Virus record (IMG/VR): IMGVR_UViG_3300028654_000001
Location: 448,572 to 512,571 of that record
Length of the DNA: 64,000 bases
Strand: one strand, 5' to 3'
The notes beneath the pieces are model-generated. The model searched no databases. It saw only the letters and a program-made list of their open reading frames with translations, and had not been told where the DNA came from. Position numbers and translations under genes: made by a program. This document shows, one piece after another, positions 1 through 50,103 of the stretch. How positions within the stretch are numbered: the first letter of the stretch is position 1; every line of letters begins with the position of its first letter.

Positions 1-193
1 TGTTAGTAGGATCATCATAGTCAATGTGGTAAGTCTCACACGCTCCGACAACTGTTGCTTCATTTACTAAGGCACCATCCAACCTAGTAATTGCATAACC
101 CTTCTGGTCACGGAACGCATTCAAATCTCGGTCTAATAGAAAGGGCTCCTCTCCAAAAGACACGACTACTGGGGTTGTGAACCTATATCCCAT
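1..193 (-). CDS. holA: DNA polymerase III delta subunit-like, N-terminal part (runs off window)
   Basis: Manual translation MGYRFTTPVVVSFGEEPFLLDRDL...; GEEPFLL resembles the HolA N-terminus; directly downstream of holB. Confidence 0.6.
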   Translation of the reverse strand, partial: MGYRFTTPVVVSFGEEPFLLDRDLNAFRDQKGYAITRLDGALVNEATVVGACETYHIDYDDPTN

Positions 194-196
194 GAT

Positions 197-1147
197 TCAC
201 TTCCCGCAAAACGTAGTTGCAAGAGCCGTTTTGAGCTGAAACCCTAAGTTTATGTAGGCAGACTCATTACGTTCAATCACACTACGGACAGCCACCCATA
301 ATTTGATCCAAGTACTCTGGGGGGCTCTAGCTCTCATAGTTGTTAGGTCTTCTTCTATATCCTGATTGACTACTCGAGACTTATCGACCTCTCCTATGAG
401 CACATCGTGTATGAGGAAGGTCAGAAAAAGAAGAGCAAGAGATAGCTCTTTAGCTAACTCATCGATTGCAGAAAATGCAGAAGGAACGTCTCCTTGGACG
501 CTGCTGTCCAACATATTGAACACACGATCTCTAACTGTGAGGCGGCTCGAACCCCAGTACCTAGTGGCCCGGCCTACCGAACCTTCTCCTAGTCTTGAGT
601 AGACAAGGGCTTTACCGGGATCACTCTCGAACTTGGAGAGTCTCTCGAAAATGAAGGATTCTGGCAATCTACTATAATTGACTCTGCCACACCGTGACCG
701 AATAGTAGGGATCACTCGATCAAAGGATTCTGCCAGCATGAAAAACCTGGATTGCGCTGGTGGCTCCTCTAACTTCTTGAGAATTGCGTTAGAAGCCGCT
801 GGTGTCATCCTATCTACACCATCAACAATGAAAAATCTGTATGGAGCTGAAACTGGGTAGCTTGTAGTCTTGAGCAATAATTCTCGAATCGGCTCAACTC
901 CTATTTCTTTGTCTTCAACAGCAGATACTACTAGTACATCAGGGTGACACCCATTATCCAGTTGTAATAGGTCAGGACTCGAAGCCCCGCGTTGAGCTAT
1001 TAGGAGTTCTCTGATGGTCTCCACCACAGAAAACTTACGACCTACGCCCTCATCACCCACAAGAAGTAAGGGTTTCTGTGCGGAGCCCTCAATGAACTTC
1101 CTGAGATAGATAACGGCCGATTCCTGTCCAACTACGTCACTTAACAC
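197..1147 (-). CDS. holB: DNA polymerase III delta' (clamp loader) subunit
   Basis: DVVGQE, GDEGVGR Walker-A-like, HPD, SNAILKKLEEPP and IPTIRSRC motifs; start moved to GTG at 1147. Confidence 0.9.
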   Translation of the reverse strand: MLSDVVGQESAVIYLRKFIEGSAQKPLLLVGDEGVGRKFSVVETIRELLIAQRGASSPDLLQLDNGCHPDVLVVSAVEDKEIGVEPIRELLLKTTSYPVSAPYRFFIVDGVDRMTPAASNAILKKLEEPPAQSRFFMLAESFDRVIPTIRSRCGRVNYSRLPESFIFERLSKFESDPGKALVYSRLGEGSVGRATRYWGSSRLTVRDRVFNMLDSSVQGDVPSAFSAIDELAKELSLALLFLTFLIHDVLIGEVDKSRVVNQDIEEDLTTMRARAPQSTWIKLWVAVRSVIERNESAYINLGFQLKTALATTFCGK

Positions 1148-11977: not shown

Positions 11978-12166
11978 TTACGCCAAACCTCTACTCTTTA
12001 GCTTGAATATCACCTGCATGACAGCAGGGTCATCCTTGCTTGGTAACTTGATCTTGTGCAGGATCTTGTACTTACCACTAGAATCAGTGGTATCTTGACG
12101 TTCGTCACTAGGACTCGACTGGCCTCGCAGCCAAGAGTCATTCTTTGGGTCAAACTTAATGTTCAT
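11978..12166 (-). CDS. hypothetical protein
   Basis: ATGA-coupled to upstream ART gene. Confidence 0.5.
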   Translation of the reverse strand: MNIKFDPKNDSWLRGQSSPSDERQDTTDSSGKYKILHKIKLPSKDDPAVMQVIFKLKSRGLA

Positions 12167-13353
12167 ATAACCCGCCCCTCATGAGCCCCACCCACAACCA
12201 ATATTTCAGCCTCAGTCTCGAGCTCTGGGTGTGTGATATTTGACATCAAGACTTTTTCTACTGGGATCTTAAATTCAAGTGCGGTGCCAAAGGCGGATGC
12301 ACGAGAAGAATCGTAACTGAAAGACGAGATGGACCTTGTGTCCAAACTGGCTTCCTGCCCTTTTTTAGACTTCTCGAGCCCTTGACCTTGAACCCCTCTG
12401 AACAGAGTTAGCTCTTTGATCCCCAAGTGCTTGTAGTAGGCCTGAGAGAAGTCATAGGCATCTTGTAGGTACTTCTTGAGTTCTTTGCTTTTAGCCCCAT
12501 CCTCACGGAATCCCTTAGCTTCATCCTCATCCTCTTTTGGAGTACGAGATCCACTAACCCCCCAGGATTCAACCGCTCCAACCATATTCTGAACAGACTC
12601 TGAATCAGCAAAGTCTCCCGCGATCCTCCACCCAGCAACAGCACCCCTACCGACTTTTTGAGCCTCAGCATCCTTTTTCGACAGGTATTGCTGGAAGTAC
12701 TCGCCGAGTTTATCGCCACCAGCCCATAGAGCTTGTTCCTGAGGGCTGAGACGATCAAAGGCCTTCTTAAACTTGTTAGGATACTGATCCCCAGGAGATC
12801 TCTTCTTCATATGGGCACTCTTGAAGGACTTGACTGCCTTAGTCATCTCAGCAGTGATCCTATCAAAGTGCTCCTTGTTTTCTGCTATGATCGCATCAAG
12901 TTTTTTGGCATCAGGCTTAAATGGATTGGTTGATACCTCTTCGTCGGAGTCACCCTTTGGTTTTGCCTCTGAAACTGGTTCCTTAGTTTCAGGCTTTTTA
13001 TCATCCTGATCTTCAGGATCCTTTGACCTGCCACCAGAGGTGTCCTCTTCCTTCTGCTTGCCAAGCCACTCATAGTACTCTTTTATGGCCTTAGAGTAGA
13101 AGCTAGGGTTCTTCAAAGCAGTACTAAAGGAGACTTCCTTGTTCTTCTTACGAGAATCAGAATCGGAGCTCGGGTTGGGTACTCTTCGCTTACCACCCTC
13201 TTGAGTGGAATCTAACCACTCTTTCCACCTAGGAGGGATCTTACCCTTCTTTGAAGACTCTTCACCTTCCTCCTCACCAGTGCTAAACGCAAGCTTGGTT
13301 TGGGCTCGAGCGTATCGAGCGGCAACACGAAGGATCAGGGCAGCTTCTGACAC
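12163..13353 (-). CDS. putative ADP-ribosyltransferase (R-S-ExE type) with N-terminal RVAARY motif
   Basis: C-terminal LTLFRGV...SISSFS...ASAFG...ETEAEILV; acidic/basic linker. Confidence 0.7.
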   Translation of the reverse strand: MSEAALILRVAARYARAQTKLAFSTGEEEGEESSKKGKIPPRWKEWLDSTQEGGKRRVPNPSSDSDSRKKNKEVSFSTALKNPSFYSKAIKEYYEWLGKQKEEDTSGGRSKDPEDQDDKKPETKEPVSEAKPKGDSDEEVSTNPFKPDAKKLDAIIAENKEHFDRITAEMTKAVKSFKSAHMKKRSPGDQYPNKFKKAFDRLSPQEQALWAGGDKLGEYFQQYLSKKDAEAQKVGRGAVAGWRIAGDFADSESVQNMVGAVESWGVSGSRTPKEDEDEAKGFREDGAKSKELKKYLQDAYDFSQAYYKHLGIKELTLFRGVQGQGLEKSKKGQEASLDTRSISSFSYDSSRASAFGTALEFKIPVEKVLMSNITHPELETEAEILVVGGAHEGRVI

Positions 13354-18372: not shown

Positions 18373-18861
18373 TTACTTACGAATCTTGGACATGAGCTTT
18401 CGACCCATGTTCATCATGTGCATACCTACAACCTCTGGATCAGCTACAATCTCTTTCAATTCAACTAGCTTTGAAAAGTCTGGCTTACCACTGATTGTGA
18501 ATGGTATGTATGACATGCTGATAGTTGTCATCTCTCCACGAATCCCTAGGTGCATCGCTATTGAGTCAACGGGTTGGGGTGGGGCAAAAAAGTAATAGAT
18601 CTCATGTAAACGCGCTGAAGCGTTCACTGAGTATTTATCCCCAAGAGTCTTCCGAAACAAGTTCAGCAAATTAGGTAGGAGTAAGTTTACGGACTCCTTA
18701 GCCAGAGCAAAAATAGGTTTATCACCAGAGGGGGCAAAAGCTAGCTTGTCCTGAAACCTAGAGAAAACCCAATCAGGGATTGGTGGGTTCCACCCTGACA
18801 TGGCTACCCGGAAGTTCCAGCTGGCGACAACTCTTCTAACTAGAGGATCCATTCTAGCCAA
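18373..18861 (-). CDS. hypothetical protein with N-terminal DPLVRRVVA motif
   Basis: 162-aa ORF; class-2 promoter. Confidence 0.65.
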   Translation of the reverse strand: MARMDPLVRRVVASWNFRVAMSGWNPPIPDWVFSRFQDKLAFAPSGDKPIFALAKESVNLLLPNLLNLFRKTLGDKYSVNASARLHEIYYFFAPPQPVDSIAMHLGIRGEMTTISMSYIPFTISGKPDFSKLVELKEIVADPEVVGMHMMNMGRKLMSKIRK

Positions 18862-21992: not shown

Positions 21993-22862
21993 TCAGGGGT
22001 TGAGCCCAAGACGTTCTGGATGAGGTTCCCAAGAAGTTAGTTTACTGCTAACCAAAGCACGGACACTGGATACCTCTCGAATCTGAGCTTTTTCATGGCT
22101 TATAACCATCTCCCGGTAGCGTTCCCAATCTACAGGAGAGGTATCTTTTCTAGTGTAGGCCTTCAGGAATCCGATGACTAAAGTGTCTTCCTCATCTCGT
22201 TCAAGTCTGCCGAGTCGAACATTGAGATCCTTCAGAAAAGAGTCCAATTGGATGAGGTACTCTTTGGTTCCTTCAGCACTAAGCTCGAAAGGTGGCCACC
22301 CGTTACCGAAACACTCCCCTTGAAGGTACCCTGTCCCAGGACGTTTGTATCCGTGAAGAACGACCCCGGGCATTGACCGATCACCCTTCTTGGCTCTTGG
22401 AAGCAGCATGAAGGGTCTGAAACAACACGGACAGGTTGCCCTGCCAACTCGAGCCCTCTCCTCACGCTCTTGCTTCTTCCTCTCGGTCTCAGCTTCGTAG
22501 GACTCCATCTGCAGAGCTTCGAGTACTTGATCCTGGAAGTGATTCTTCGTCAACCACTTCTCTAGGGTCTCACCCTCAGCGTTTCGAATGATGAATAGGT
22601 ACTCCCTCCCGATGTAATCGAAGAAGACTCCAGTCTCGAATACAGCTCCGTTTGGGGCAGTGAACTTGGTTCCTCCCCTGAGGGGCTCGATTGTCCAACC
22701 AAGATAGTCGAAGACTGGCCATAGCTCCTTGAGTGTTTTCCCTAGCTTTGGATTCTTTCGAACCCAGAGTAAGAGCTTTGTCATCTTCTCTGGATCCAGA
22801 GGTCTCTTACGAGCAGCCGCTTGAAAACGACGGGCCACTCTCTGGACAATAGGATCTTCCAC
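21993..22862 (-). CDS. hypothetical protein with N-terminal DPIVQRVARRF motif
   Basis: TCPCCFR..VLHGYKRPGTGY..GECFG zinc module. Confidence 0.7.
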   Translation of the reverse strand: MEDPIVQRVARRFQAAARKRPLDPEKMTKLLLWVRKNPKLGKTLKELWPVFDYLGWTIEPLRGGTKFTAPNGAVFETGVFFDYIGREYLFIIRNAEGETLEKWLTKNHFQDQVLEALQMESYEAETERKKQEREERARVGRATCPCCFRPFMLLPRAKKGDRSMPGVVLHGYKRPGTGYLQGECFGNGWPPFELSAEGTKEYLIQLDSFLKDLNVRLGRLERDEEDTLVIGFLKAYTRKDTSPVDWERYREMVISHEKAQIREVSSVRALVSSKLTSWEPHPERLGLNP

Positions 22863-23865: not shown

Positions 23866-24636
23866 CTAAATCTCGAGATCATCTAAAAGAGACTCTAGGT
23901 CACCTTGGATGTACTCGAAGATCGACTGGTTGCCATCAAAGTACTTAGTCACACCCTGACCAACCTTGGTCTCTACTACATCAGTGCTAATCTCTTCAAA
24001 GTTAGATGGAAGTGCATCCTCCCACTCATCATAGTTAGTAGGAAGGTTGTGTATCCACTCCTTGAAGAAAGCGAAACTACCGTAATCATGGTCAGAAGGT
24101 GAGAAGTCTGGGATGTAGCTATGAACCTGATCCAGAGCCCTCTGTTGTTTAGAGAAGTCTAATGACTTCAACCAACTTAGATCCTCCTCTGTAGGAGCAT
24201 CCTCAGGGAATGACCCAATACGATCTATCAGATCGTTCCGATCAAAATCAACAAGTACTTTGGCTATAGGAGAATCATCAATATCACTGTAGATATCGTC
24301 AGCATTGAAGTCATATCGTTGAAGAAGAAGCCCGATTAGCTTAAGTTCTCGCTTGAGTTCTTTTTGTAGGTTGGGTAAGTCAGAGGGATCATCTATTAAA
24401 GACTTGAATCGATGAGTGTATTCCTTGTCTAACTTCTTCAACCTAGAATCAATGTCCAGGAGTTTTCTGGTCTTATCACTCAAGGGTTTCGAGTCGAACG
24501 CTTTACTCATGGTATCTAATAAAGAGAGAGGCCCCGATAGATTCCACTCCTTGAATGTATACCAAGCTAGATTGAGTCTTCGGACATCAACCGCAGCTTT
24601 ATACCTAGCAACCACCCGAGAAACTAGAGAACTCAT
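23866..24636 (-). CDS. acidic hypothetical protein with N-terminal LVSRVVARY motif
   Basis: 256-aa ORF; class-2-like promoter. Confidence 0.65.
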   Translation of the reverse strand: MSSLVSRVVARYKAAVDVRRLNLAWYTFKEWNLSGPLSLLDTMSKAFDSKPLSDKTRKLLDIDSRLKKLDKEYTHRFKSLIDDPSDLPNLQKELKRELKLIGLLLQRYDFNADDIYSDIDDSPIAKVLVDFDRNDLIDRIGSFPEDAPTEEDLSWLKSLDFSKQQRALDQVHSYIPDFSPSDHDYGSFAFFKEWIHNLPTNYDEWEDALPSNFEEISTDVVETKVGQGVTKYFDGNQSIFEYIQGDLESLLDDLEI

Positions 24637-31664: not shown

Positions 31665-31754
31665 GGGGGTCAAGCACTTTTTTGAAAATTCTTTTTTTTG
31701 ACCACATGCCCGCCCCTCGGGGACAGAAAGTTCTTATCCAACTTCCTAGAAAGG

Positions 31755-32360
31755 ATGCTCACTCCGATCACACCCAAGACGGCTTCTGTAAAGGCTAGCT
31801 CAGAAAACACCAAGAAATTCAAAAGCTTGGTGTTCAATTCTGATTGGGACAAGTTCGTCGAAGAGTGGACACCCAAGATCTACTACTACCTTATAGGGGC
31901 TCTAGGCCCCTTTGGACGCGAACCTCTTCCCACAATCCTCCCCATGAGTGATGGTCCACACATGAGTGGGGCGACCGCCTCCTTCAACATGGATACGGGT
32001 CAGGTGAGGCTTTGTCCTTCTGTTGAGGGTAACCCAGGGCAAACTCTCGAGAAGCTTACTCATGAGTTTACACACGGAAGTTATGCTCTCTTTCCTTCCA
32101 ATGACGAGTTCTATGACGAGGGTTATGTCGACTTCTCGACCTGGGTTTTAGTGCACGCACCTACCTATGGTGAATACCGACAACAAGCTATTGATGCTGC
32201 TGCTTACAATATCAAGATGCGCCGAGAGAGGGCAATGAAGAACCTCTCCAACTATGATCGGAAAAGGTGGGCAGGAGGGTGTTATGCCTCTATGTTCCTA
32301 GGGCCTATGATCCTACATCGAATGAGAATGAAAAAGTCTGAGGGTGACTACACTTGGTAG
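31755..32360 (+). CDS. HExxH zincin-like metallopeptidase domain protein
   Basis: LTHEFTH..YDEGYVD. Confidence 0.6.
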   Translation: MLTPITPKTASVKASSENTKKFKSLVFNSDWDKFVEEWTPKIYYYLIGALGPFGREPLPTILPMSDGPHMSGATASFNMDTGQVRLCPSVEGNPGQTLEKLTHEFTHGSYALFPSNDEFYDEGYVDFSTWVLVHAPTYGEYRQQAIDAAAYNIKMRRERAMKNLSNYDRKRWAGGCYASMFLGPMILHRMRMKKSEGDYTW

Positions 32361-32656: not shown

Positions 32657-33235
32657 TCACATCTCGAGCATCATTCTAAATGCATCCGTGTACTCAGGTC
32701 TAGACCCCAAGAATATCTTCTTCTGATCCGGATTCCCATCGAGTCCAGCGAGTACCCCTCTCCACAGACCGTCTTCGGAATCGAAGGCTAGTGATTTGAT
32801 CCCATGCATCACACTAGTTGACTCCCAAATGGATAACTTCTCAGATGGGTAGTTGTCCATTAAGTAAGCTAGTTTTCTCAGGTCAAAACCAACCTTGAAC
32901 ATCTTACCCTGCAGCTTACTAACAGGGTCATCATCAAACCCAATCAATCCAGGGTTAGATACTCCAGCCCACTCAAGAAGCTCTTTTCGAGAAGCTTGAA
33001 TGCCGTTAGAGTCTCTAGTAACCCATAAGAATGGGAGTTTTGGGGAGCCTAACATTGGCTCAGCCACTCTCCCCTTATAGGCCATCAGTGTATGACCACA
33101 GGTGCCAACTGACCAAAAGACATCAGCATCTTGTAATGGAAACTCAGGTTCGGCCAAGAAAGGTCTGTCCCTCCAAGGATCTGAGAATCCCTTGAAGATT
33201 CCAACAAACTTGCTGAGTACTTCAATTGGTTCCAT
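32657..33235 (-). CDS. hypothetical protein
   Basis: 192-aa ORF. Confidence 0.6.
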   Translation of the reverse strand: MEPIEVLSKFVGIFKGFSDPWRDRPFLAEPEFPLQDADVFWSVGTCGHTLMAYKGRVAEPMLGSPKLPFLWVTRDSNGIQASRKELLEWAGVSNPGLIGFDDDPVSKLQGKMFKVGFDLRKLAYLMDNYPSEKLSIWESTSVMHGIKSLAFDSEDGLWRGVLAGLDGNPDQKKIFLGSRPEYTDAFRMMLEM

Positions 33236-33527
33236 ATGGAATGTCTACATTATTCAGAGCGAGATCTCTGGTAAGCTTTACACCGGAATCACCAACAACC
33301 CACAAAAAAGGCTTAAAGCCCATAACCAAGGGACTGGAGCCAAGGCTACCCGATCTGGAAGGCCCTGGCACTTCGTTTACCTCGAGGTTGTTCCAGATAA
33401 GGGGTCTGCCCTTCGAAGGGAACTAGCAATCAAGAAGCTTACTCGTCTGAAGAAGCTTACTCTGATTCAAGCTCAAGCATCAAGTCAAAAGCTTCCCGTT
33501 GAAGCTCTTCTTCGTTGCGTTCCTTAA
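33210..33527 (+). CDS. GIY-YIG nuclease (UPF0213/YhbQ-like), start uncertain
   Basis: WNVYII..LYTGITNN..RLKAHNQGTGAKATR..ALRRELAIKKL. Confidence 0.85.
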   Translation: MLSTSIGSIWNVYIIQSEISGKLYTGITNNPQKRLKAHNQGTGAKATRSGRPWHFVYLEVVPDKGSALRRELAIKKLTRLKKLTLIQAQASSQKLPVEALLRCVP

Positions 33528-34848
33528 GGGCATGATCAACCCTCACTTGGGCGGTATAAGCTGAAGCAGATTCCTTTTCGATCCCAATGAAGTCGAAGCC
33601 CTTATGGACAGCAGCCACGCACGTAGTACCTGATCCACAATAAGGGTCGAGTATCAAACCCTTCACAGGAGTAGCCATGGTGACCAAGTACTCCATTAAC
33701 CTAACGGGCTTTACCGTCGCATGCTCGTTCTCATCATCCTGTTCAAGACCCTCATTCTTTTCAGCCTGACTCGGCTTTGGAACATAGAAGAAAGTTGACT
33801 CAGGGTCGATGTTGACGAAGTACTTTGAGGCACCATTAGGAGACTTAGTAGGAGCTATAGATTTGGACCCCTTCCTAGCTCTAGTAGGCTTCCCAATAGC
33901 TCCACTATGAAAGTGAAGCCAACGGATCGGACAGGAGTGGTGACAATCCCAGATCTCTATCTCTTCATCGTCTCTCGTAATGGTCGTATACTTGTGTCCA
34001 GCTCCACCACCAAATGGTTTAGCACCATCATCAAATCGATTGATGGGTGGCATAGCAACCATCTCGGACCCGACTTTACGACACAAATCGGAGTGAACCA
34101 TGATGAGGTTTGGGGGAAACCTACCAGACGTCTTTACGTCATTGGCTCCAGAGAGATCTGAACTATTCTTCCAACTATTGCCCATCTTCCCCCCGCGGGC
34201 CTTGATAGCATCTACGCCTGCTTTATGCTTCTCAAAGTCCTCTGGGGATGAGTGCTTAACTCGAGAAGACTCGATGTTGATCCCGCCGGTACCCGTCTTC
34301 TTGATCTGCTCAATCACTGAGCTCTCTTTGACTGGCTTGCGGAACATCAAGATGGGTTCCCAGTAAGGCTTCAAAGCTGTACCAAAACCATCCCATTGCT
34401 CAAGAAGATCATCGAGATTGAGTTCTCGCATCTTCTTTCCAATGTCTGAACTCTTCGGCATCCCTTGAGCTCGAATCCACCTCAAGATAGGCGGACCCAT
34501 CTCAGCTGGAATCACATCCCTGTTCTCAAACCCTGCAGCTCGAATCCCAATCGACAAGATGTCTTGGGTACGAGTACCGGCGAAGCAGAAGAGAAAAGCT
34601 CCTGGTTTGAGTACTCGGAAGCATTCCTTCCAAACCGCAACAGAAGGTAAATCCCAATCCTTGTGCATGAACTCGCCCATATCGAGTTCTGAACCCAATA
34701 GGTAAGCAACAATCTCCTCAATTGTTGGGTCTCGGTCACCTAGGCCATAAGGAGGGTCTGTGACAATAGAGTCAACCGACTCATTAGGGATCAGCTTGAG
34801 AGTGGGTAGACAAAGGCCATGGACGATGGTGTTGTTTGGTACTGTCAC
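33457..34848 (-). CDS. N6A/N4C DNA methyltransferase (beta class)
   Basis: SVDSIVTDPPY near N-terminus; HATVKP, ILDPYCGSGTT, FIGIE near C-terminus. Confidence 0.92.
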   Translation of the reverse strand: MTVPNNTIVHGLCLPTLKLIPNESVDSIVTDPPYGLGDRDPTIEEIVAYLLGSELDMGEFMHKDWDLPSVAVWKECFRVLKPGAFLFCFAGTRTQDILSIGIRAAGFENRDVIPAEMGPPILRWIRAQGMPKSSDIGKKMRELNLDDLLEQWDGFGTALKPYWEPILMFRKPVKESSVIEQIKKTGTGGINIESSRVKHSSPEDFEKHKAGVDAIKARGGKMGNSWKNSSDLSGANDVKTSGRFPPNLIMVHSDLCRKVGSEMVAMPPINRFDDGAKPFGGGAGHKYTTITRDDEEIEIWDCHHSCPIRWLHFHSGAIGKPTRARKGSKSIAPTKSPNGASKYFVNIDPESTFFYVPKPSQAEKNEGLEQDDENEHATVKPVRLMEYLVTMATPVKGLILDPYCGSGTTCVAAVHKGFDFIGIEKESASAYTAQVRVDHALKERNEEELQREAFDLMLELESE

Positions 34849-34868
34849 AAGGTTGACTTACACCAGAG

Positions 34869-35672
34869 TCACAAGTCAAAGTGCTGTTCTAAGACGTTTT
34901 TGATAGTTCGCTTGTATTTGTCCAATCGGCTATCAGCCCTGTTATCAGGAAACTCTTTACCCTCTAGGTAGGGAAGCATTCTACCACGTGTAATCTCGAC
35001 ATCACTATACCCATCTAGAATCAACTTGAAGTAAAGGCCAATGTCTTCCGCGTAATCAGAACTAACCGAACTCTCGAGCTCAGTTATGATCTGCTGCTGT
35101 TCTGATTGAGGTATCAAATCCCCAAGGTTATCCCAAGCTGACGGTTGCTCAACAACGTCGTCGAGGGTGTCGTGTTCCCTAAGCTTCTCACGCCTAAGTG
35201 TGTTGATGGTCTCATTCTTTACAGCGCTCAATGTGTAGTTCTCGGCATAGCTCAAGGACTGCCCTTGAATCTTGTTCTTGAAGTTCTTGTCCGAATAGAG
35301 CTTGAGAGACACTCTCGAGAGTACATCCTCGATAGCATCGTCCCTGGTAAAGGAGTTCTGGGATCTGGTTCGGAAGTCATTCTTCAAGTACCTGAACGCG
35401 GCTCCTCTGGCTCTCTTACCAAAGTCTAGACCGTAACCCTTTAGCCGAGTGATCTCCCTTGTATTCTTCGGCATGAATGGAGCCGGTGGCATATCCGTCA
35501 CGCCATACAACAAGAAAAGTCCATACATGAGCTGACCGAACTCAGCTGGCTCAGTAGCAAACTTGACTCGATGAAGTAGTCTGGCTACTCGCAGCCCCCA
35601 AGGTAGAGAGGCAGCAACCTTTGCCCGAAGATCTCTGGTAGCTCGCACTAAACGAGGAAGGGTGTCCATCAC
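34869..35672 (-). CDS. sigma-factor-like protein
   Basis: AIEDVLSRVSLKLY..YTLSAVKNETINTLRRE (region 2-like); LILDGYSDVEI (region 4-like). Confidence 0.55.
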   Translation of the reverse strand: MMDTLPRLVRATRDLRAKVAASLPWGLRVARLLHRVKFATEPAEFGQLMYGLFLLYGVTDMPPAPFMPKNTREITRLKGYGLDFGKRARGAAFRYLKNDFRTRSQNSFTRDDAIEDVLSRVSLKLYSDKNFKNKIQGQSLSYAENYTLSAVKNETINTLRREKLREHDTLDDVVEQPSAWDNLGDLIPQSEQQQIITELESSVSSDYAEDIGLYFKLILDGYSDVEITRGRMLPYLEGKEFPDNRADSRLDKYKRTIKNVLEQHFDL

Positions 35673-35696
35673 ACCAGATTTCGAATAAAGAGATCC

Positions 35697-36851
35697 TCAA
35701 TTCAAGTGAGCGAGTACTTTGAGTACTCGCTTCGGAAGCCTCATCCTGCTAACAATCTCTTCTGCAGTAAGCCCTCGAGCGACAAGTGACAGGATCTCCT
35801 CATGCTTTGCAGCAATTAGGTCTTCTTTCCCGTTGAAAAAGAACCCTAGTGCTTCATGTAGGGCATACATATTCTCTTGGCGAGGCCCATAGTTGTCAAC
35901 CAGAGTGTCTTCCCAGGACTTGCCAGTATCCAAGTCCATACCTGGGAAGTGCTCCTTGTACTTCCGATCTCTAGTGCGGCACCAATTAGCGTAAATGTTG
36001 TGAACTGACCTAGCTAAGTACAACTTGAAGTAAGGTTTTGGTTGAAGCTTGAGAGGTTGGACACTTGGATTACTCTTGCAACGAGGGTTGGTGTCCCGCT
36101 CACTCTTGAGCCGTTCAACGTCAGCCGTGTGGTAAGTGGCCACTCTGGAGCCATAAGTACCGCTAGCTGGAGTCAAGCACGGGCGCTCAGGAGGGCTATT
36201 TACAATTAGCAGTTCCTCTGGAACACCTCCGAACACCTTCACCACACAAGATGGGCAGAACACCTTGTATCTGACCTTGAAGGTATCGCCTTTCTTAAAG
36301 GAGATGGTCTCATCTAGGCCGACGTAACAGAATACTCGGTGGTTGCTTGGAACCCACATCCTGGCCATGACCTTTGCGTACTTGGCTCTATCGGAATACA
36401 ACCAATGGTCATCGAGGACGTGTTGAAGTTTCTTAGTGCTGTTCCCGCAGCAGTGACAATCAGGACCATCTCTCAGGAGTACTTCGTCTTTTAGGGTAGG
36501 GGAGGCTTGTCTAAAATACCCATTACTCTTACTTCGCGGATCGCCGTTCATACCTCTAATCTGCATGTACTTGAAACCCTCCCAGGTCATACCCAGAAAG
36601 GAGCAAGTTTGATCCGTGGTCAGAACTTTAGGGATTGAACCTGTAGACGAATTATACTTTGTTATTAAATCTACCCTGAGTATCTCGAGCCAGACATGTT
36701 GGAGTAGGTCATCGAAGTTGGCCGACACACGATTGTAACGAGTTACCAAACGAGTCACAAACGGTGCATATGACTTGTAAAGATCATCCCCGTTCTTAGG
36801 CACATAGTCGTCAGGTAAGCCAAAAGTAGCCTGATTAGCAGAATTAACCAC
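35697..36851 (-). CDS. sigma-factor-like protein with internal HTH/Zn insertion
   Basis: LYKSYAPFV..FDDLLQHVWL..[~200 aa]..FKLYLARSVHNIYANWCR..LVARGLTAEEIVSRM. Confidence 0.65.
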   Translation of the reverse strand: MVNSANQATFGLPDDYVPKNGDDLYKSYAPFVTRLVTRYNRVSANFDDLLQHVWLEILRVDLITKYNSSTGSIPKVLTTDQTCSFLGMTWEGFKYMQIRGMNGDPRSKSNGYFRQASPTLKDEVLLRDGPDCHCCGNSTKKLQHVLDDHWLYSDRAKYAKVMARMWVPSNHRVFCYVGLDETISFKKGDTFKVRYKVFCPSCVVKVFGGVPEELLIVNSPPERPCLTPASGTYGSRVATYHTADVERLKSERDTNPRCKSNPSVQPLKLQPKPYFKLYLARSVHNIYANWCRTRDRKYKEHFPGMDLDTGKSWEDTLVDNYGPRQENMYALHEALGFFFNGKEDLIAAKHEEILSLVARGLTAEEIVSRMRLPKRVLKVLAHLN

Positions 36852-36982
36852 AAGACCTCTGTTGGTTTCTACACTAGAAGTTGTTTCTTGAATTAGGTAC
36901 CAAGCCTAACCCCACATTGGTACACATAGGTGGTGAGGGGCTTAGTGTAATAACCCACTGGGTCGACCGGTGTCAATACTAA

Positions 36983-37675
36983 ATGAGAGAGCCAATGCAC
37001 GAAAATATTCTCCCTGGAGGTAGGAGGAAAACCCCTACCAAAATATTTGGATCTCACTCAAAGAGTAGTAGCTCTAACCCGATTAGTTCTACATATAAAA
37101 TCACTGAGAGCGGAGAGTATGACCTTGATTTACCGGATGATTCTGAAAATGTAGAGTCAATTCTTGCTGAAATGGAGGCTCAAAGATCTTTGTTCGATGT
37201 TGCCTTCCAAAGAGGATCACTTGAAAGAGCCATCTCTCTAGTGAGGGATGCTTTGAACCTTCAATCAGAGAACCCAGAGAAGTTCGAAACCAAACTTCTG
37301 GTTTTCTGTTTGAATCATTGCCTAGGTAACATCAGAAGTGAGTTAATCCCACATTCCCCAAGAGGAGCCAGTTGGTCCCAACTGGCTTTTGAGTCTTTAG
37401 CAATTGGTTGGATGCGCTGGATGTCTAATGGAGACAAAGGGGTCCTTAACTACATCAACCACATGAGCGAAGATGAACCCGAAGAGGGTGACAAGGCTGT
37501 CGAGACCCTCAGCTTGAACTTCTGGGCTAAAGCGATCGAGATGCTTGTGATTGGACGATCTGAAGATTCTCGAAGATTCTTCGAACGAGCTAATGAAGTT
37601 GGAGCCAACTACGGTACTCGAACCAATCCTTCTATCTGTTGGACTTATGCTACAAGCTTCTTTATGACTATCTGA
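36983..37675 (+). CDS. hypothetical helical protein
   Basis: 230-aa ORF. Confidence 0.6.
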   Translation: MREPMHENILPGGRRKTPTKIFGSHSKSSSSNPISSTYKITESGEYDLDLPDDSENVESILAEMEAQRSLFDVAFQRGSLERAISLVRDALNLQSENPEKFETKLLVFCLNHCLGNIRSELIPHSPRGASWSQLAFESLAIGWMRWMSNGDKGVLNYINHMSEDEPEEGDKAVETLSLNFWAKAIEMLVIGRSEDSRRFFERANEVGANYGTRTNPSICWTYATSFFMTI

Positions 37676-39785: not shown

Positions 39786-40400
39786 ATGTCGATTGGTCTG
39801 CTCTCAAAAAGCGTCACAAATTTGATCAGGTCAGCCAAGGCTGCCTGGGGTCAGAGGTCAACCGGGATACTCTCCGGTAGGGCGATAGCCGCGGCCATCG
39901 ACGATGGGTCGATCATCATCGACCCATACGACCGGAAGCATTTGAACCCAGCCTCCTACGACTTGACTTTAGGTGATGAGGTTAAGATTTACGACATAAA
40001 CTCCATAGGAAACTGCACATTGGATTCGAAGAAGGCCAATCCGACCAGAGAGCTGAAGATCCCTCCAGAGGGGATTCGTCTCCTACCCGGTACTGGCTAC
40101 TTGATGCACACGCGCGAGAGGGTAGGGACCAAGAAGTTTGTCCCAATCATCGACGGAAAGTCAAGTATCGGTAGGCTTTTTGCTCTAATCCACTATACGG
40201 CCGGGTACGGTGACCCTGGGTTCTTCGGCCAATACACACTAGAGGTTTCGGTAGTACACTCTATCATCCTCTATGCGGGTATGCAGATTTGTCAGATTAG
40301 ATTCCAAACTATTAGTGGTGAAGTTGATCTTTACAACGGGCACTACAAGGGTGAAACAGCACAAGGAGCTGTAGCCTCTCACGCATATGAGCAGTTTTAG
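39786..40400 (+). CDS. dcd: dCTP deaminase
   Basis: LNPASYDLTLG, GKSSIGRL, TAGYGDPGFFGQYTLE, GMQICQI. Confidence 0.95.
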   Translation: MSIGLLSKSVTNLIRSAKAAWGQRSTGILSGRAIAAAIDDGSIIIDPYDRKHLNPASYDLTLGDEVKIYDINSIGNCTLDSKKANPTRELKIPPEGIRLLPGTGYLMHTRERVGTKKFVPIIDGKSSIGRLFALIHYTAGYGDPGFFGQYTLEVSVVHSIILYAGMQICQIRFQTISGEVDLYNGHYKGETAQGAVASHAYEQF

Positions 40401-40440
40401 TACTCGTTGAAACAACATGGTACATGAAAGGCACAAATAA

Positions 40441-41169
40441 ATGAACTTTCGTAACCCTATCGTCGCTGACTACATGTTCCACCAACCCAAAGACCACGCT
40501 ACAGAAGCGGGACCCGACGAACACACCCACGATGTCGACTGCGCTTGTGAAGAGAAGCTCAAGATCCTAACCCTCCGATACTTTCCAGACGAGATCCTGA
40601 AGAAGAAGTGCAACCCCATCCCCGAGGTTACTGAGGACATCGTAAGGTTGGCCAAGAACATGGTCTACACGATGATGATCGAAGGTGGTGTGGGTTTGTC
40701 TGGTCCCCAGGTGGGCAAGCTGCTCAAGATCTTCGTAGTTGACGTCTCGTGGCACGGGAAGGCCGAGGATGCTGACCCTCAAATCTTCATCAACCCCGAG
40801 GTTGAACCCTTTACGGAAGAAGCTGACGCTCTTGGGACCGACGTGGATTACTCCAAGGCAACCCCACGGATCACTTCTACCGAAGGATGCCTATCCTTCC
40901 CCGGCGGGCGCGGGAAGGTCGAACGGTATGAATCCATTCGGGTGAAGTACCTCGATATTGATGGGAAGCCCTGTACCATGAATGCCCAAGGGTATCTTGC
41001 CAGAGCTATCCAACACGAGAATGATCACCTAGATGGGATCACTATTCAGTCGAGTATCCCCGCTTTCGATATGCGGAATGTCCATGAGAACGTCAAGATA
41101 CTCCTCCGCAAGCGGGTCCGCGATCTGAAGCCGGCACCCAAGAAAACGAAGGCTAAGACCCACCGTTAG
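40441..41169 (+). CDS. def: peptide deformylase
   Basis: GVGLSGPQVG, FINPE, EGCLS, QHENDHLDG. Confidence 0.95.
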   Translation: MNFRNPIVADYMFHQPKDHATEAGPDEHTHDVDCACEEKLKILTLRYFPDEILKKKCNPIPEVTEDIVRLAKNMVYTMMIEGGVGLSGPQVGKLLKIFVVDVSWHGKAEDADPQIFINPEVEPFTEEADALGTDVDYSKATPRITSTEGCLSFPGGRGKVERYESIRVKYLDIDGKPCTMNAQGYLARAIQHENDHLDGITIQSSIPAFDMRNVHENVKILLRKRVRDLKPAPKKTKAKTHR

Positions 41170-50026: not shown

Positions 50027-50031
50027 GTTAG

Positions 50032-50103
50032 AGACCCCAGGGGGGTTCGAACCCCCGCATATGGAGTTAGAGTCCGGTGTTCTGCCAATTGAACTATGGG
50101 GTC
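50032..50103 (-). tRNA. amber suppressor-type tRNA(CTA)
   Basis: Acceptor GACCCCA/TGGGGTC, D and T arms canonical, loop CT-CTA-AC, only 3-bp anticodon stem. Confidence 0.75.

What the first reader, a model, noticed from the sequence alone, without database searches (positions are those of the whole stretch)
34869..36851. Tandem sigma-like genes, one with a nested HTH and Zn/HNH-like insertion inside region 2
Seen: in 35697-36851 the region 2.1-2.2-like part (LYKSYAPFV..DDLLQHVWL) is separated from the 2.3-2.4-like part (FKLYLARSVHN) by about 200 aa. This insert starts like an excisionase-type HTH (VLTTDQTCSFLGMT), is interrupted by LKDEVLLRDGPDCHCCG..FCPSC (HNH-like zinc scaffold without catalytic His), and ends with ATYHTADVERL. 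The neighbouring sigma-like gene carries the RVA tag. Inference: two sigma factors could match the two promoter classes, with an unusual built-in DNA-binding module.
Basis: inference. Interest (0 to 1): 0.6.

Follow-up and report, generated by a model that had tools for sequence, protein, structure and literature searches.

The report
Phage sigma factor with nested domains
A 512-kb soil phage encodes a sigma factor whose promoter-melting domain is interrupted, at the loop that normally reads the -10 base, by a winged-helix domain that itself carries a catalytically dead zinc HNH domain. This architecture is conserved across a large, undescribed family of uncultivated phages.

Summary
Gene A (35697-36851, minus, 384 aa) is a sigma-70-family protein with a split sigma2 domain. 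Residues 24-59 match the first half of Pfam Sigma70_r2. The second half (residues 275-296) lies 215 residues downstream.

The AlphaFold model reassembles one sigma2 fold from both halves (Z 8.7). The insert is doubly nested. An excisionase/MerR-like winged helix (74-112 plus 223-255) encloses a ZRANB3-like HNH zinc domain (113-222). That domain keeps its four Cys but has no catalytic His in 67 of 67 relatives.

The insertion sits in the sigma2 "specificity loop". Relatives show all grades:
- one has no insert;
- about 104 have the winged helix only;
- about 60 have winged helix plus HNH.

The insert is under purifying selection (dN/dS 0.09).

Gene order A, then B, then DNA methyltransferase is conserved in 8 of 8 related phage loci. 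A sigma-70-like promoter precedes A and is conserved.

Gene B (266 aa) has no Pfam match, and its sigma-like fold is only moderately supported. It does not carry the genome's real N-terminal "RVA" tag.

No family member was found in 50,697 GenBank phage records or 185,579 prokaryote genomes.

What the insert does and which promoters A reads are inferred, not shown. I rate it a new variant of a known kind.

The parts
35697..36851 (-). Gene A: sigma-70-family protein of 384 aa with a doubly nested insertion in sigma2
   Evidence: ORF. Pfam Sigma70_r2, and in 23 of 23 relatives. AlphaFold model with pLDDT 75. Fold matches.
36666..36818 (-). Sigma2 N-terminal half (residues 12-62): regions 2.1-2.2 with the invariant DLLQH.W core-binding motif
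   Evidence: Pfam profile positions 1-36. D48, L49, L50, Q51, H52 and W54 are invariant.
36516..36665 (-). Winged-helix N-terminal half (residues 63-112): strand 76-78, helix 79-86 and recognition helix 90-102
   Evidence: Secondary structure. Matches 8c3t excisionase at Z 5.3 (55 of 57 residues aligned, model range 74..255) and 3hh0 MerR at Z 5.1.
36186..36515 (-). Catalytically dead ZRANB3-like HNH zinc domain (residues 113-222), with CxxC at 132-135 and 199-202
   Evidence: Profile against 5mkw gives E=1.4e-7 and 4.2e-8. VIA Z 7.2. Atlas HNH clusters at TM 0.53-0.55 over residues 116-208. His is absent from both catalytic positions in 67 of 67 sequences, and the Cys ligands are present in 60-67 of 67.
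36066..36185 (-). Winged-helix C-terminal half (residues 223-262): wing strands 228-230 and 239-241, helix 242-254
   Evidence: P228, G231, S235, A238, Y240 and E246 are conserved.
35937..36047 (-). Sigma2 C-terminal half (residues 269-305): the region 2.3-2.4 helix and the most conserved block of the family
   Evidence: F275, K276, Y278, L279, A280, H284, N285, I286, N289, W290, C291 and R292 are invariant. The homologous block of the insert-less relative P0220 matches Pfam r2 positions 42-71.
35700..35936 (-). Conserved linker (SWEDTL block) and a short C-terminal sigma4/LuxR-like HTH (residues 306-384)
   Evidence: GerE hits in 2 of 23 members (E 0.0011) and Sigma70_r4_2 in 1 of 23 (E 0.19). 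LuxR-type HTH chains score E 0.05-1. pLDDT here is only 52-71.
34869..35669 (-). Gene B: 266-aa all-helical protein, a probable highly diverged sigma-like partner or second sigma
   Evidence: 20 homologues. Model with pLDDT 79.5. ECF sigma2 matches at Z 6-6.5 over 49-168 and sigma4 matches at Z 5.2-5.4 over 186-267. Sigma clusters in the Atlas and BFVD. It always lies directly after gene A.
33457..34848 (-). N6/N4 DNA methyltransferase, third gene of the conserved block
   Evidence: Pfam N6_N4_Mtase at E=1e-30. It is syntenic in the related loci.
36947..36976 (-). Conserved sigma-70-like promoter upstream of gene A: TTGACA (36971-36976), an 18-nt spacer, then TATTAC (36947-36952)
   Evidence: TTGAC and a downstream TA (aligned here as G.TA) are invariant at fixed spacing in 8 of 8 aligned upstream regions that are otherwise 39% identical. 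It is one of only 5 such sites in non-coding DNA of the genome.
34859..34864 (-). GGTGTA hexamer 16 nt before the GTG start of the methyltransferase, in the 20-nt gap after gene B
   Evidence: Sequence. The same motif and spacing precede the methyltransferase in L003-L007, L009 and L014.
36983..37675 (+). Divergently transcribed conserved gene of unknown function (230 aa) that always flanks gene A
   Evidence: tblastn hits in 8 of 8 loci. It has no Pfam match.

Best explanation
Gene A encodes a functional sigma-70-family factor of the two-domain, ECF-like type (sigma2 plus a short sigma4-like HTH) from a 512-kb rhizosphere phage that has no recognisable RNA polymerase of its own.

The loop of sigma2 between regions 2.2 and 2.3 is the specificity loop. 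In known sigmas it forms the pocket for the flipped -10 base. Here it is replaced by an excisionase/MerR-type winged-helix domain. In this subfamily that domain itself carries a zinc-binding but catalytically dead ZRANB3-like HNH domain, between its recognition helix and its wing.

Proposed mechanism:
1. The A-B-methyltransferase operon is transcribed early by host holoenzyme from a conserved sigma-70-like promoter.
2. A binds host core polymerase through its invariant region 2.2 motif.
3. Its region 2.3-2.4 helix and sigma4-like HTH read the phage promoter.
4. The inserted module projects from sigma2 at the upstream edge of the -10 element and supplies an extra, built-in DNA contact. This would be analogous to sigma3 on an extended -10, or to a MerR-type regulator bound in the spacer. 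The dead HNH domain would serve as a zinc-stabilised structural or DNA-clamping platform.
5. Gene B is a very diverged sigma-like protein that acts with A or after it.

Shown here: the architecture, its conservation, the selection on it, the synteny and the upstream promoter.
Inferred: core binding, and the DNA-reading role of the insert.

My sub-probabilities:
- nested architecture as described: 0.9
- A is a working sigma: 0.75
- the insert is a DNA-reading head: 0.4
For: Sigma identity:
- Pfam Sigma70_r2 in 23 of 23 family members.
- About 30 solved sigma2 domains are the top fold matches, at Z 8.7-6, with about 76 aligned residues spanning model residues 19..302.
- The DLLQH.W motif and the FK.YLA..HNI..NWCR helix are invariant.

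Insertion site:
- The N half matches profile positions 1-36/37 and the C half matches 42-71.

Nested folds:
- ZRANB3 HNH at E=4e-8, Z 7.2 and TM 0.53-0.55.
- Excisionase 8c3t at Z 5.3 with 55 of 57 residues aligned, bridging the HNH domain.
- Dead nuclease with retained zinc site: 0 of 67 sequences have His at either catalytic position, and the Cys ligands are present in 60-67 of 67.

Grades of insertion:
- Relatives with an 18-aa loop (n=1), an 80-140-aa winged helix (n=104) and a 160-240-aa winged helix plus HNH (n=60).
- The indels are clean in the alignment.
- The HNH grade is nearly monophyletic: 3 changes on the tree against a shuffled mean of 50.

Selection: dN/dS is 0.086 for the insert and 0.03 for the core.

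Context:
- A-B-methyltransferase synteny in 8 of 8 loci, and in the winged-helix-only and insert-less lineages.
- Conserved TTGACA-N18-TA promoter upstream.
- No RNA polymerase beta or beta-prime domain in the phage genome.
Against: - No binding to RNA polymerase or DNA was tested.
- The winged-helix assignment rests on a model and on middling Z scores (5.1-5.3). Sequence profiles of the contiguous winged-helix-only inserts hit nothing in the PDB, and only 1 of 33 hits HTH_17, at E 0.016.
- The sigma4 part is short, poorly modelled (pLDDT 52-71) and matches LuxR/GerE-type HTH only weakly.
- Replacing the specificity loop could just as well abolish -10 base capture as extend it.
- No cognate promoter motif has been linked to A.
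- The host is unknown, so "sigma-70-like promoter" assumes a host with a canonical primary sigma.
Confidence: 0.5

Rival explanations
1. The insert is a regulatory or protein-docking module rather than a DNA reader. It could be an autoinhibitory lid over the -10-binding face of sigma2, a zinc or redox switch comparable to zinc-binding anti-sigma domains, or a handle for another phage or host protein such as gene B, a clamp, or the beta lobe or beta-prime.
For: - The insert sits exactly on the surface that must capture the flipped -10 base, so occlusion is geometrically plausible.
- It has an invariant Cys4 site.
- The contiguous winged-helix inserts give no sequence-level match to DNA-binding HTH families.
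- Gene B always co-occurs.
Against: - The fold matches are to DNA-binding winged helices and to a DNA-binding nuclease fold.
- Basic residues on the putative recognition helix (the W..FK....R pattern) are conserved.
- Most relatives lack the zinc domain altogether, so a zinc switch cannot be the ancestral role of the insert.
Confidence: 0.28
2. A and B work as one unit: either a two-subunit sigma, or a sigma with a sigma-mimicking partner or anti-sigma. The pair would be comparable to T4 gp55 with gp33, rather than being two independent sigma factors for two promoter classes.
For: - B lies directly after A in 8 of 8 loci, and also after the winged-helix-only and insert-less relatives, down to 25% identity.
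- The gaps between the genes are 24 and 20 nt.
- B has no detectable sigma sequence signature, and its most conserved block (residues 45-85) is not sigma-like.
Against: - B's model has both sigma2-like and sigma4-like domains in the canonical order.
- A already has both domains.
- No interaction test could be run.
- Sigma cascades also place their genes side by side.
Confidence: 0.22
3. The insert is the decaying remnant of a selfish element, such as an HNH homing endonuclease, an intein or an intron ORF. It would be tolerated in a surface loop and have no function.
For: - HNH domains are typical of homing endonucleases.
- The catalytic residues are lost.
- PHROG HNH gives a weak hit at E 0.011.
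- GIY-YIG genes lie nearby.
Against: - dN/dS of the insert is 0.086.
- The zinc ligands and many other positions are conserved across 31-87% identity.
- The HNH grade is nearly monophyletic and old.
- No Rfam intron family occurs in the region.
- There are no intein junction residues.
- The reading frame is continuous and the fold is integrated.
Confidence: 0.04
4. Gene A is not a sigma factor but a sigma-derived DNA-binding regulator, or a structural protein, that no longer binds RNA polymerase.
For: - The canonical specificity loop is lost.
- The sigma4 signal is weak.
- The genome already has two canonical sigma genes.
Against: - The region 2.2 core-binding motif and the region 2.3-2.4 helix are the most conserved parts of the protein, with invariant positions in 23 sequences and dN/dS of 0.01-0.015.
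- That pattern is what one expects of a protein still constrained by polymerase and -10 DNA contacts.
Confidence: 0.06

Closest known systems
ECF (group 4) sigma factors, e.g. E. coli sigmaE and M. tuberculosis sigmaH
   Same: - Compact sigma2 plus sigma4 with no sigma1.1 or sigma3.
- A region 2.2 core-binding motif.
- A region 2.3-2.4 helix with an aromatic residue and an Asn at the positions of sigmaH W81 and N88. That register is by my reading of the alignment.
- Best fold matches at Z 8.7-7.3.
   Different: - The 8-to-15-residue specificity loop is replaced by a folded module of 206 residues, or about 90 residues in most relatives.
- The sigma2-sigma4 linker is long and strongly conserved.
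- No anti-sigma gene is recognisable.
- The family is found only in uncultivated phages.
Non-conserved region of primary sigma70 (between regions 1.2 and 2.1)
   Same: It is a precedent for a lineage-specific domain inserted into sigma2 (from my own knowledge).
   Different: It lies at a different site, on the opposite side of sigma2. It is not a DNA-binding fold and is not nested.
ZRANB3 HNH domain (PDB 5mkw)
   Same: - It is the closest solved relative of residues 113-222, at profile E=4e-8 and Z 7.2.
- It has the same helical insertion between the first CxxC and the beta-beta-alpha core.
   Different: The general-base His and the final metal-binding His are both absent here in 67 of 67 sequences. 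The domain is embedded inside another domain.
Excisionase / AlpA / MerR-type winged helix, e.g. GIsul2 excisionase 8c3t and MerR-family 3hh0
   Same: - The strand-helix-helix-wing-helix topology.
- 55 of 57 residues superpose at 2.4 A.
- MerR regulators act from the promoter spacer (own knowledge), which is a functional analogy.
   Different: There is no significant sequence membership. The domain is split by a 110-residue domain between the recognition helix and the wing, and is itself inserted into sigma2.
T4 late transcription pair gp55 / gp33
   Same: Adjacent small phage proteins that together replace host sigma functions on host core polymerase (own knowledge, and PMC7824862).
   Different: There is no sequence relation. 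A has both sigma2 and a sigma4-like HTH. An A-B interaction was not tested.

Membership tests
Sigma-70 family (gene A) | Region 2.1-2.2 helix pair with the core-binding motif | tested here: met
   PF04542 profile positions 1-36 at residues 24-59, 25 bits against a cut-off of 24. 23 of 23 relatives match, best E 4.7e-7. DLLQH.W is invariant.
Sigma-70 family (gene A) | Region 2.3-2.4 helix completing the sigma2 fold | tested here: met
   The model reassembles sigma2 from residues 19-60 plus 275-302. It scores Z 8.7-6 against about 30 solved sigma2 domains. The homologous block of P0220 matches PF04542 positions 42-71 at E 0.001.
Sigma-70 family (gene A) | Region 4 HTH | tested here: inconclusive
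   Only weak GerE, LuxR and Sigma70_r4_2 signals. No sigma4 chain is among the top 50 fold matches, and pLDDT is 52-71.
Sigma-70 family (gene A) | Binds core RNA polymerase and directs promoter-specific initiation | not tested
The host is unknown, and this needs biochemistry.
ECF (group 4) sigma | Short specificity loop between regions 2.2 and 2.3 | tested here: not met
   The loop is replaced by 206 residues. Only 1 of 179 scored relatives has a short (18-aa) loop.
HNH endonuclease (beta-beta-alpha-Me) | HNH fold with a Cys4 zinc site | tested here: met
   5mkw at E=1.4e-7 and 4.2e-8. Z 7.2. Atlas HNH clusters at TM 0.53-0.55. Cys ligands present in 60-67 of 67.
HNH endonuclease (beta-beta-alpha-Me) | Catalytic His (general base) and terminal metal-binding His | tested here: not met
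   0 of 67 sequences have His at either column. The general-base position is K, R or L, and the last position is L, V or A.
Excisionase / MerR-type winged helix (HTH_17, MerR_1) | Sequence match to the family models | tested here: not met
   MerR_1 hits 2 of 23 members at E 0.008-0.16. HTH_17 hits 1 of 33 at E 0.016. A PDB profile search gave nothing.
Excisionase / MerR-type winged helix (HTH_17, MerR_1) | Strand-helix-turn-helix-wing-helix fold | tested here: inconclusive
   8c3t at Z 5.3 with 55 of 57 residues aligned at rmsd 2.4, and 3hh0 at Z 5.1. These Z values are in the range the tool calls common.
Intein or self-splicing intron insertion | Splicing junction residues, or an intron RNA fold | tested here: not met
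   No Rfam family occurs in 34869-36851 at the gathering threshold. The frame is continuous, and dN/dS is 0.086 in frame.
Sigma-70 family (gene B) | Significant match to region 2 or region 4 models | tested here: not met
   No Pfam hit for B. Only 3 of 18 homologues hit Sigma70_r2, at E of 0.096 or worse. The PDB profile search found no sigma below E 6.8.
Sigma-70 family (gene B) | Sigma2 followed by sigma4 fold | tested here: inconclusive
   SigW and SigK sigma2 at Z 6.5 over residues 49-168. SigR and SigF sigma4 at Z 5.4 and 5.2 over 186-267. Sigma clusters appear in the Atlas and BFVD lists. hhalign of B against A is collinear but has probability 6.6%.

The most novel reading that the evidence does not exclude
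This would be a sigma factor with three DNA-reading heads. A built-in winged-helix and zinc module at the -10 specificity loop would set promoter choice. It might read an extra promoter element, or the methylation mark written by the methyltransferase(s) that always share its operon. On that reading, only phage-modified DNA would be transcribed by the redirected host polymerase. Living relatives would preserve each step of the nested domain accretion: no insert, then winged helix, then winged helix with a dead HNH domain.
Probability: 0.25. Interest if true: 0.82.

Novelty: new variant of a known kind. Interest (0 to 1): 0.6.

Why it matters
Sigma factors are the textbook case of modular promoter recognition, and the specificity loop of sigma2 is the element that captures the flipped -10 base during promoter melting. 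A large natural family replaces this loop with a folded domain of DNA-binding type: 716 representatives at E<=1e-3 and 176 at E<=1e-10. This shows that the melting module can tolerate, and perhaps exploit, a whole extra domain.

If the insert reads DNA, it defines a new promoter architecture for huge soil phages. It would also give a compact, highly specific, orthogonal sigma scaffold for synthetic biology.

The three surviving grades of insertion offer a rare, testable example of stepwise nested domain evolution and of a nuclease fold recruited as a zinc scaffold.

The conserved early operon of sigma, sigma-like protein and DNA methyltransferase suggests how these phages, which lack their own polymerase, take over host transcription.

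Tried and rejected
No result or not available:
No interaction claim is made.
- blastn and tblastn against 50,697 GenBank phage records with the region, P0001, P0093 and P0106 gave no match.
- A genome-contig scan with the conserved sigma2 C-half motif found no relative in 185,579 prokaryote species genomes. The broader alignment A5 had no searchable block.
- A word search for short (64-203 aa) insert-less kin found only an 80-aa fragment. The exhaustive profile search then found one insert-less relative, P0220.
- No RNA sequencing run holds the locus, so expression and 5' ends could not be examined.
- Literature searches found no description of a sigma with such an insertion. This covers only the held library.

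Weak or uninformative:
- Whole-model Foldseek searches of A and B against the PDB gave no hit at E<=0.001. The VIA search gave per-domain aligned ranges that resolved the nested domains.
- Sequence searches of the contiguous winged-helix inserts against the PDB and Pfam gave nothing significant, and Pfam on the full insert gave nothing.
- hhalign of A or B profiles against a single canonical sigma of the same genome was uninformative even for the positive control, although the short matches fell at homologous positions.
- The Atlas feature search with the insert gave no usable hit.

Considered and rejected:
- The sigma-70-like promoter pattern is not a genome-wide class: 13 sites against 17 in shuffles.
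- Intein, intron or assembly chimera: rejected.
- B as a carrier of the N-terminal tag: rejected.
Full report
**Context.** The window is the last 64 kb of a 512,571-bp IMG/VR virus record with direct terminal repeats. Near-identical DNA occurs in several rhizosphere and soil metagenomes. One independent assembly (run X2) covers the whole two-gene region on a single contig without a single difference, so the gene is not an assembly chimera. The phage genome has no recognisable RNA polymerase beta or beta-prime domain. It has two further canonical Sigma70_r2 genes elsewhere. It therefore presumably redirects host polymerase. This fits what is described for jumbo phages that lack their own polymerase (PMC7824862).

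**Observation check.** Gene A (35697-36851, minus strand) is an intact 384-aa ORF.
- Pfam Sigma70_r2 matches residues 24-59 to profile positions 1-36 of 71 and then stops.
- The FKLYLARSVHN... helix begins at residue 275.
- Gene B starts at the ATG at 35669 and encodes 266 aa.

**Family.** A word search found 55 clusters of 350-420-aa proteins, all from metagenomes. Many sit on contigs of 225-512 kb.
- In an alignment of 23 members down to 31% identity, the insert is present in every one.
- D48-L-L-Q-H52, W54, C132, C199, C202 and a block from F275 to R296 are invariant.
- All 23 match Sigma70_r2.

**Structure of A.** An AlphaFold model built from this alignment has mean pLDDT 75. An exhaustive structural comparison with 48,161 PDB representatives gave three separate signals.
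- About 30 solved sigma2 domains came top, including sigmaH, SigK, SigC, AlgU, sigma28, sigmaB and SigI. They score Z 8.7-6 and rmsd 2.4-3.1. Only about 76 residues align, but these span model residues 19 to 302. So the two halves come together as one sigma2 fold.
- The human ZRANB3 HNH domain scores Z 7.2 over residues 114-225.
- The GIsul2 excisionase (8c3t) scores Z 5.3 with 55 of its 57 residues aligned at 2.4 A, and a MerR-family protein (3hh0) scores Z 5.1. Both alignments span model residues 74 to about 257, bridging the HNH domain.

The predicted secondary structure fits an excisionase-type winged helix with the HNH domain inserted between recognition helix and wing:
- strand 76-78, helix 79-86, helix 90-102;
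- then the HNH domain;
- then strands 228-230 and 239-241 and helix 242-254.

**Independent support for the HNH domain.**
- The family profile hits 5mkw at E=1.4e-7, and at E=4.2e-8 with the insert alone.
- The ESM Atlas shape search puts residues 116-208 on clusters that are 95-99% PF01844, at TM 0.53-0.55.
- In 67 sequences of this grade, the four Cys ligands are present in 66, 60, 67 and 67.
- The position of the general-base His is K, R or L and never His. The last His position is L, V or A.
- So this is a zinc scaffold without nuclease chemistry.

**Limits of the winged-helix call.** Sequence support for the winged helix is absent. That assignment rests on the model and on middling Z scores.

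**Where the insertion lies.**
- The N half ends at Pfam r2 position 36-37.
- In the naturally insert-less relative P0220, the block homologous to residues 275-296 matches r2 positions 42-71.
- The insert therefore replaces r2 positions of about 37-42, the loop between regions 2.2 and 2.3.
- This loop is the specificity loop. It corresponds to residues 72-79 of M. tuberculosis sigmaH, just before W81. [quoted passage not shown]
- By my reading of the alignment, Y278 and N285 of gene A fall at the positions of sigmaH W81 and N88.

**Evolutionary series.** An exhaustive profile search of 1.84 billion representatives found 716 proteins at E<=1e-3 and 176 at E<=1e-10. I scored the fetched proteins with sub-profiles for each part.
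- One relative has an 18-residue loop.
- 104 have an 80-140-residue insert that matches only the two winged-helix halves.
- 60 have 160-240 residues including the HNH domain.
- 9 have other long inserts.
- A joint alignment shows the HNH module as a clean indel inside the winged helix, and the winged helix as a clean indel inside the sigma2 loop.
- On a FastTree tree of the core with the insert removed, the HNH grade needs 3 changes against a shuffled mean of 50. Well-supported branches force only one change. A single origin is therefore compatible but not proven.

**Selection.** Against an 87%-identical homologue, dN/dS is 0.086 for the insert, 0.089 for the HNH part, 0.044 for the first winged-helix half and 0.01-0.05 for the sigma core. 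dS is about 1.2, which is near saturation, so the ratios are only qualitative.

**Neighbourhood.** In all 8 related viral loci the order is the same: a divergent conserved gene, then A, then B, then an N6/N4 DNA methyltransferase.
- A B homologue also follows the winged-helix-only sigma on L014, where three methyltransferases come next.
- A B homologue also follows the insert-less sigma on L015.
- The gaps between the genes are 24 and 20 nt.

**Promoter upstream of A.** An alignment of 8 otherwise diverged upstream regions (39% identity) shows an invariant TTGAC(A/G). A TA follows after a fixed 18 nt, in the direction of gene A.
- In the window this is TTGACA at 36971-36976 and TATTAC at 36947-36952.
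- Such sites are rare in this genome, with 5 in non-coding DNA.
- I read this as a host-type early promoter for the operon. That reading is an inference, because the host is unknown.

**Gene B.** B has 20 homologues and no Pfam family. Its model (pLDDT 79.5) resembles ECF sigma2 domains over residues 49-168 (SigW and SigK at Z 6.5; RpoE and sigmaH at about 6). It resembles sigma4 domains over residues 186-267 (SigR at Z 5.4 with 61 of 65 residues; SigF at Z 5.2 with 56 of 57).
- Sigma clusters recur in the Atlas and BFVD lists.
- hhalign aligns B collinearly with A's region 2.4, linker and HTH, but at low probability.
- B is therefore probably a very diverged sigma-like protein.

**The "RVA tag".** The genome does have a real N-terminal tag of the form D-h-x-h-h-x-R-V-A-x-R-F/Y at residues 3-18.
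- 13 of 705 ORFs carry it, against about 1 expected. About a dozen weaker matches follow.
- Carriers include a DRAT-like ADP-ribosyltransferase, a type IB topoisomerase and a putative metallopeptidase.
- B scores 2.5 on the tag matrix against 30-42 for true carriers, and its RVA is at residue 28. B does not carry the tag.

**Promoter classes.**
- The hexamer GGTGTA is about 10-fold enriched upstream of genes. 48 of its 297 genomic occurrences begin 15-18 nt before a start codon.
- It precedes the methyltransferase here (34859-34864) and in related phages.
- Genes with it almost never have a Shine-Dalgarno-like sequence, and one-mismatch variants are not enriched.
- It could be a stringent -10-like element for leaderless transcripts or a translation signal. 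Nothing links it to A or B.

**Mechanism.** The most likely working, step by step:
1. Host holoenzyme transcribes the A-B-methyltransferase operon early.
2. A binds host core through region 2.2.
3. Its region 2.3-2.4 helix and C-terminal HTH contact the promoter.
4. The module that replaces the specificity loop projects at the upstream edge of the -10 element and adds a duplex-DNA contact.
5. The dead HNH domain acts as a zinc-stabilised platform.

The architecture, conservation, selection, synteny and promoter are shown here. Core binding and the DNA-reading role are inferred. The main rivals are a regulatory or docking role for the insert and an A-B two-protein unit. A selfish-element remnant and a non-sigma role are disfavoured by the selection and conservation data.

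**Novelty.**
- No member was found in 50,697 GenBank phage records or in 185,579 prokaryote species genomes.
- Pfam has no model for the insert.
- The held literature has no description.

It is still a sigma-70-family protein, so I rate it a new variant of a known kind.

Noticed in passing
Whole genome G000. In the window, e.g. 34859-34864 (minus, before the methyltransferase) and 16 nt before the dCTP deaminase start at 39786: The exact hexamer GGTGTA is about 10-fold enriched upstream of genes, and 48 of its 297 occurrences start 15-18 nt before a start codon. Such genes lack Shine-Dalgarno-like sequences (3 of 53), and one-mismatch variants are not enriched. The motif and its spacing are conserved in related phages. 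It is either a stringent -10-like element for leaderless mRNAs or an unusual translation signal.
   Followed up: partly
Window 12163-13353, 18373-18861, 21993-22862 and 23866-24636 (all minus), and at least 9 further genes in G000: There is a genuine N-terminal tag, D-h-x-h-h-x-R-V-A-x-R-F/Y at residues 3-18. 13 of 705 ORFs carry it against about 1 expected, and about 12 weaker matches follow. Carriers include a DRAT-like ADP-ribosyltransferase, a type IB topoisomerase and a putative zinc metallopeptidase that sits next to a canonical sigma gene. It might be a capsid-targeting or packaging signal for injected proteins, which is speculation.
   Followed up: partly
Window 9361-31022 (minus) and 50031-50103 (minus): There is a very large tRNA island of about 41 tRNA genes plus a tmRNA with tag peptide VADLPRDSLGSG. 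A separate tRNA has anticodon CTA, which reads TAG as an amber suppressor (ARAGORN calls it Pyl). I saw no sign of recoding in the genes studied here.
   Followed up: no
G000:C1:255886-256089 (minus; 188-aa ORF) and 77304-77516 (plus; 269-aa ORF): Two further sigma genes have complete, uninterrupted Sigma70_r2 matches and are sigma28/SigF-like by eye. With A and B, the phage therefore carries up to four sigma-like genes.
   Followed up: partly
L002:5986-7996: The methyltransferase homologue in the closest viral locus is split into three tblastn pieces with a gap of about 670 nt. This may be an insertion such as an intein, an intron or a homing-endonuclease gene.
   Followed up: no
Window 33102-33527 (plus) against 32657-33235 (minus): A GIY-YIG domain ORF (Pfam E=7e-22) overlaps the 5' part of a conserved ORF on the opposite strand by about 130 nt. 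Both have homologues in related loci, so the true starts need checking.
   Followed up: no
Window 31698-32360 (plus): A conserved 220-aa protein with an HExxH motif (HEFTH) travels with the sigma block, even next to the insert-less sigma on L015. It has no Pfam family and may be a metalloprotease.
   Followed up: no
Window 39786-41169 (plus): A dCTP deaminase-like gene and a peptide deformylase gene lie just beyond the block. The deaminase is syntenic in related phages.
   Followed up: no
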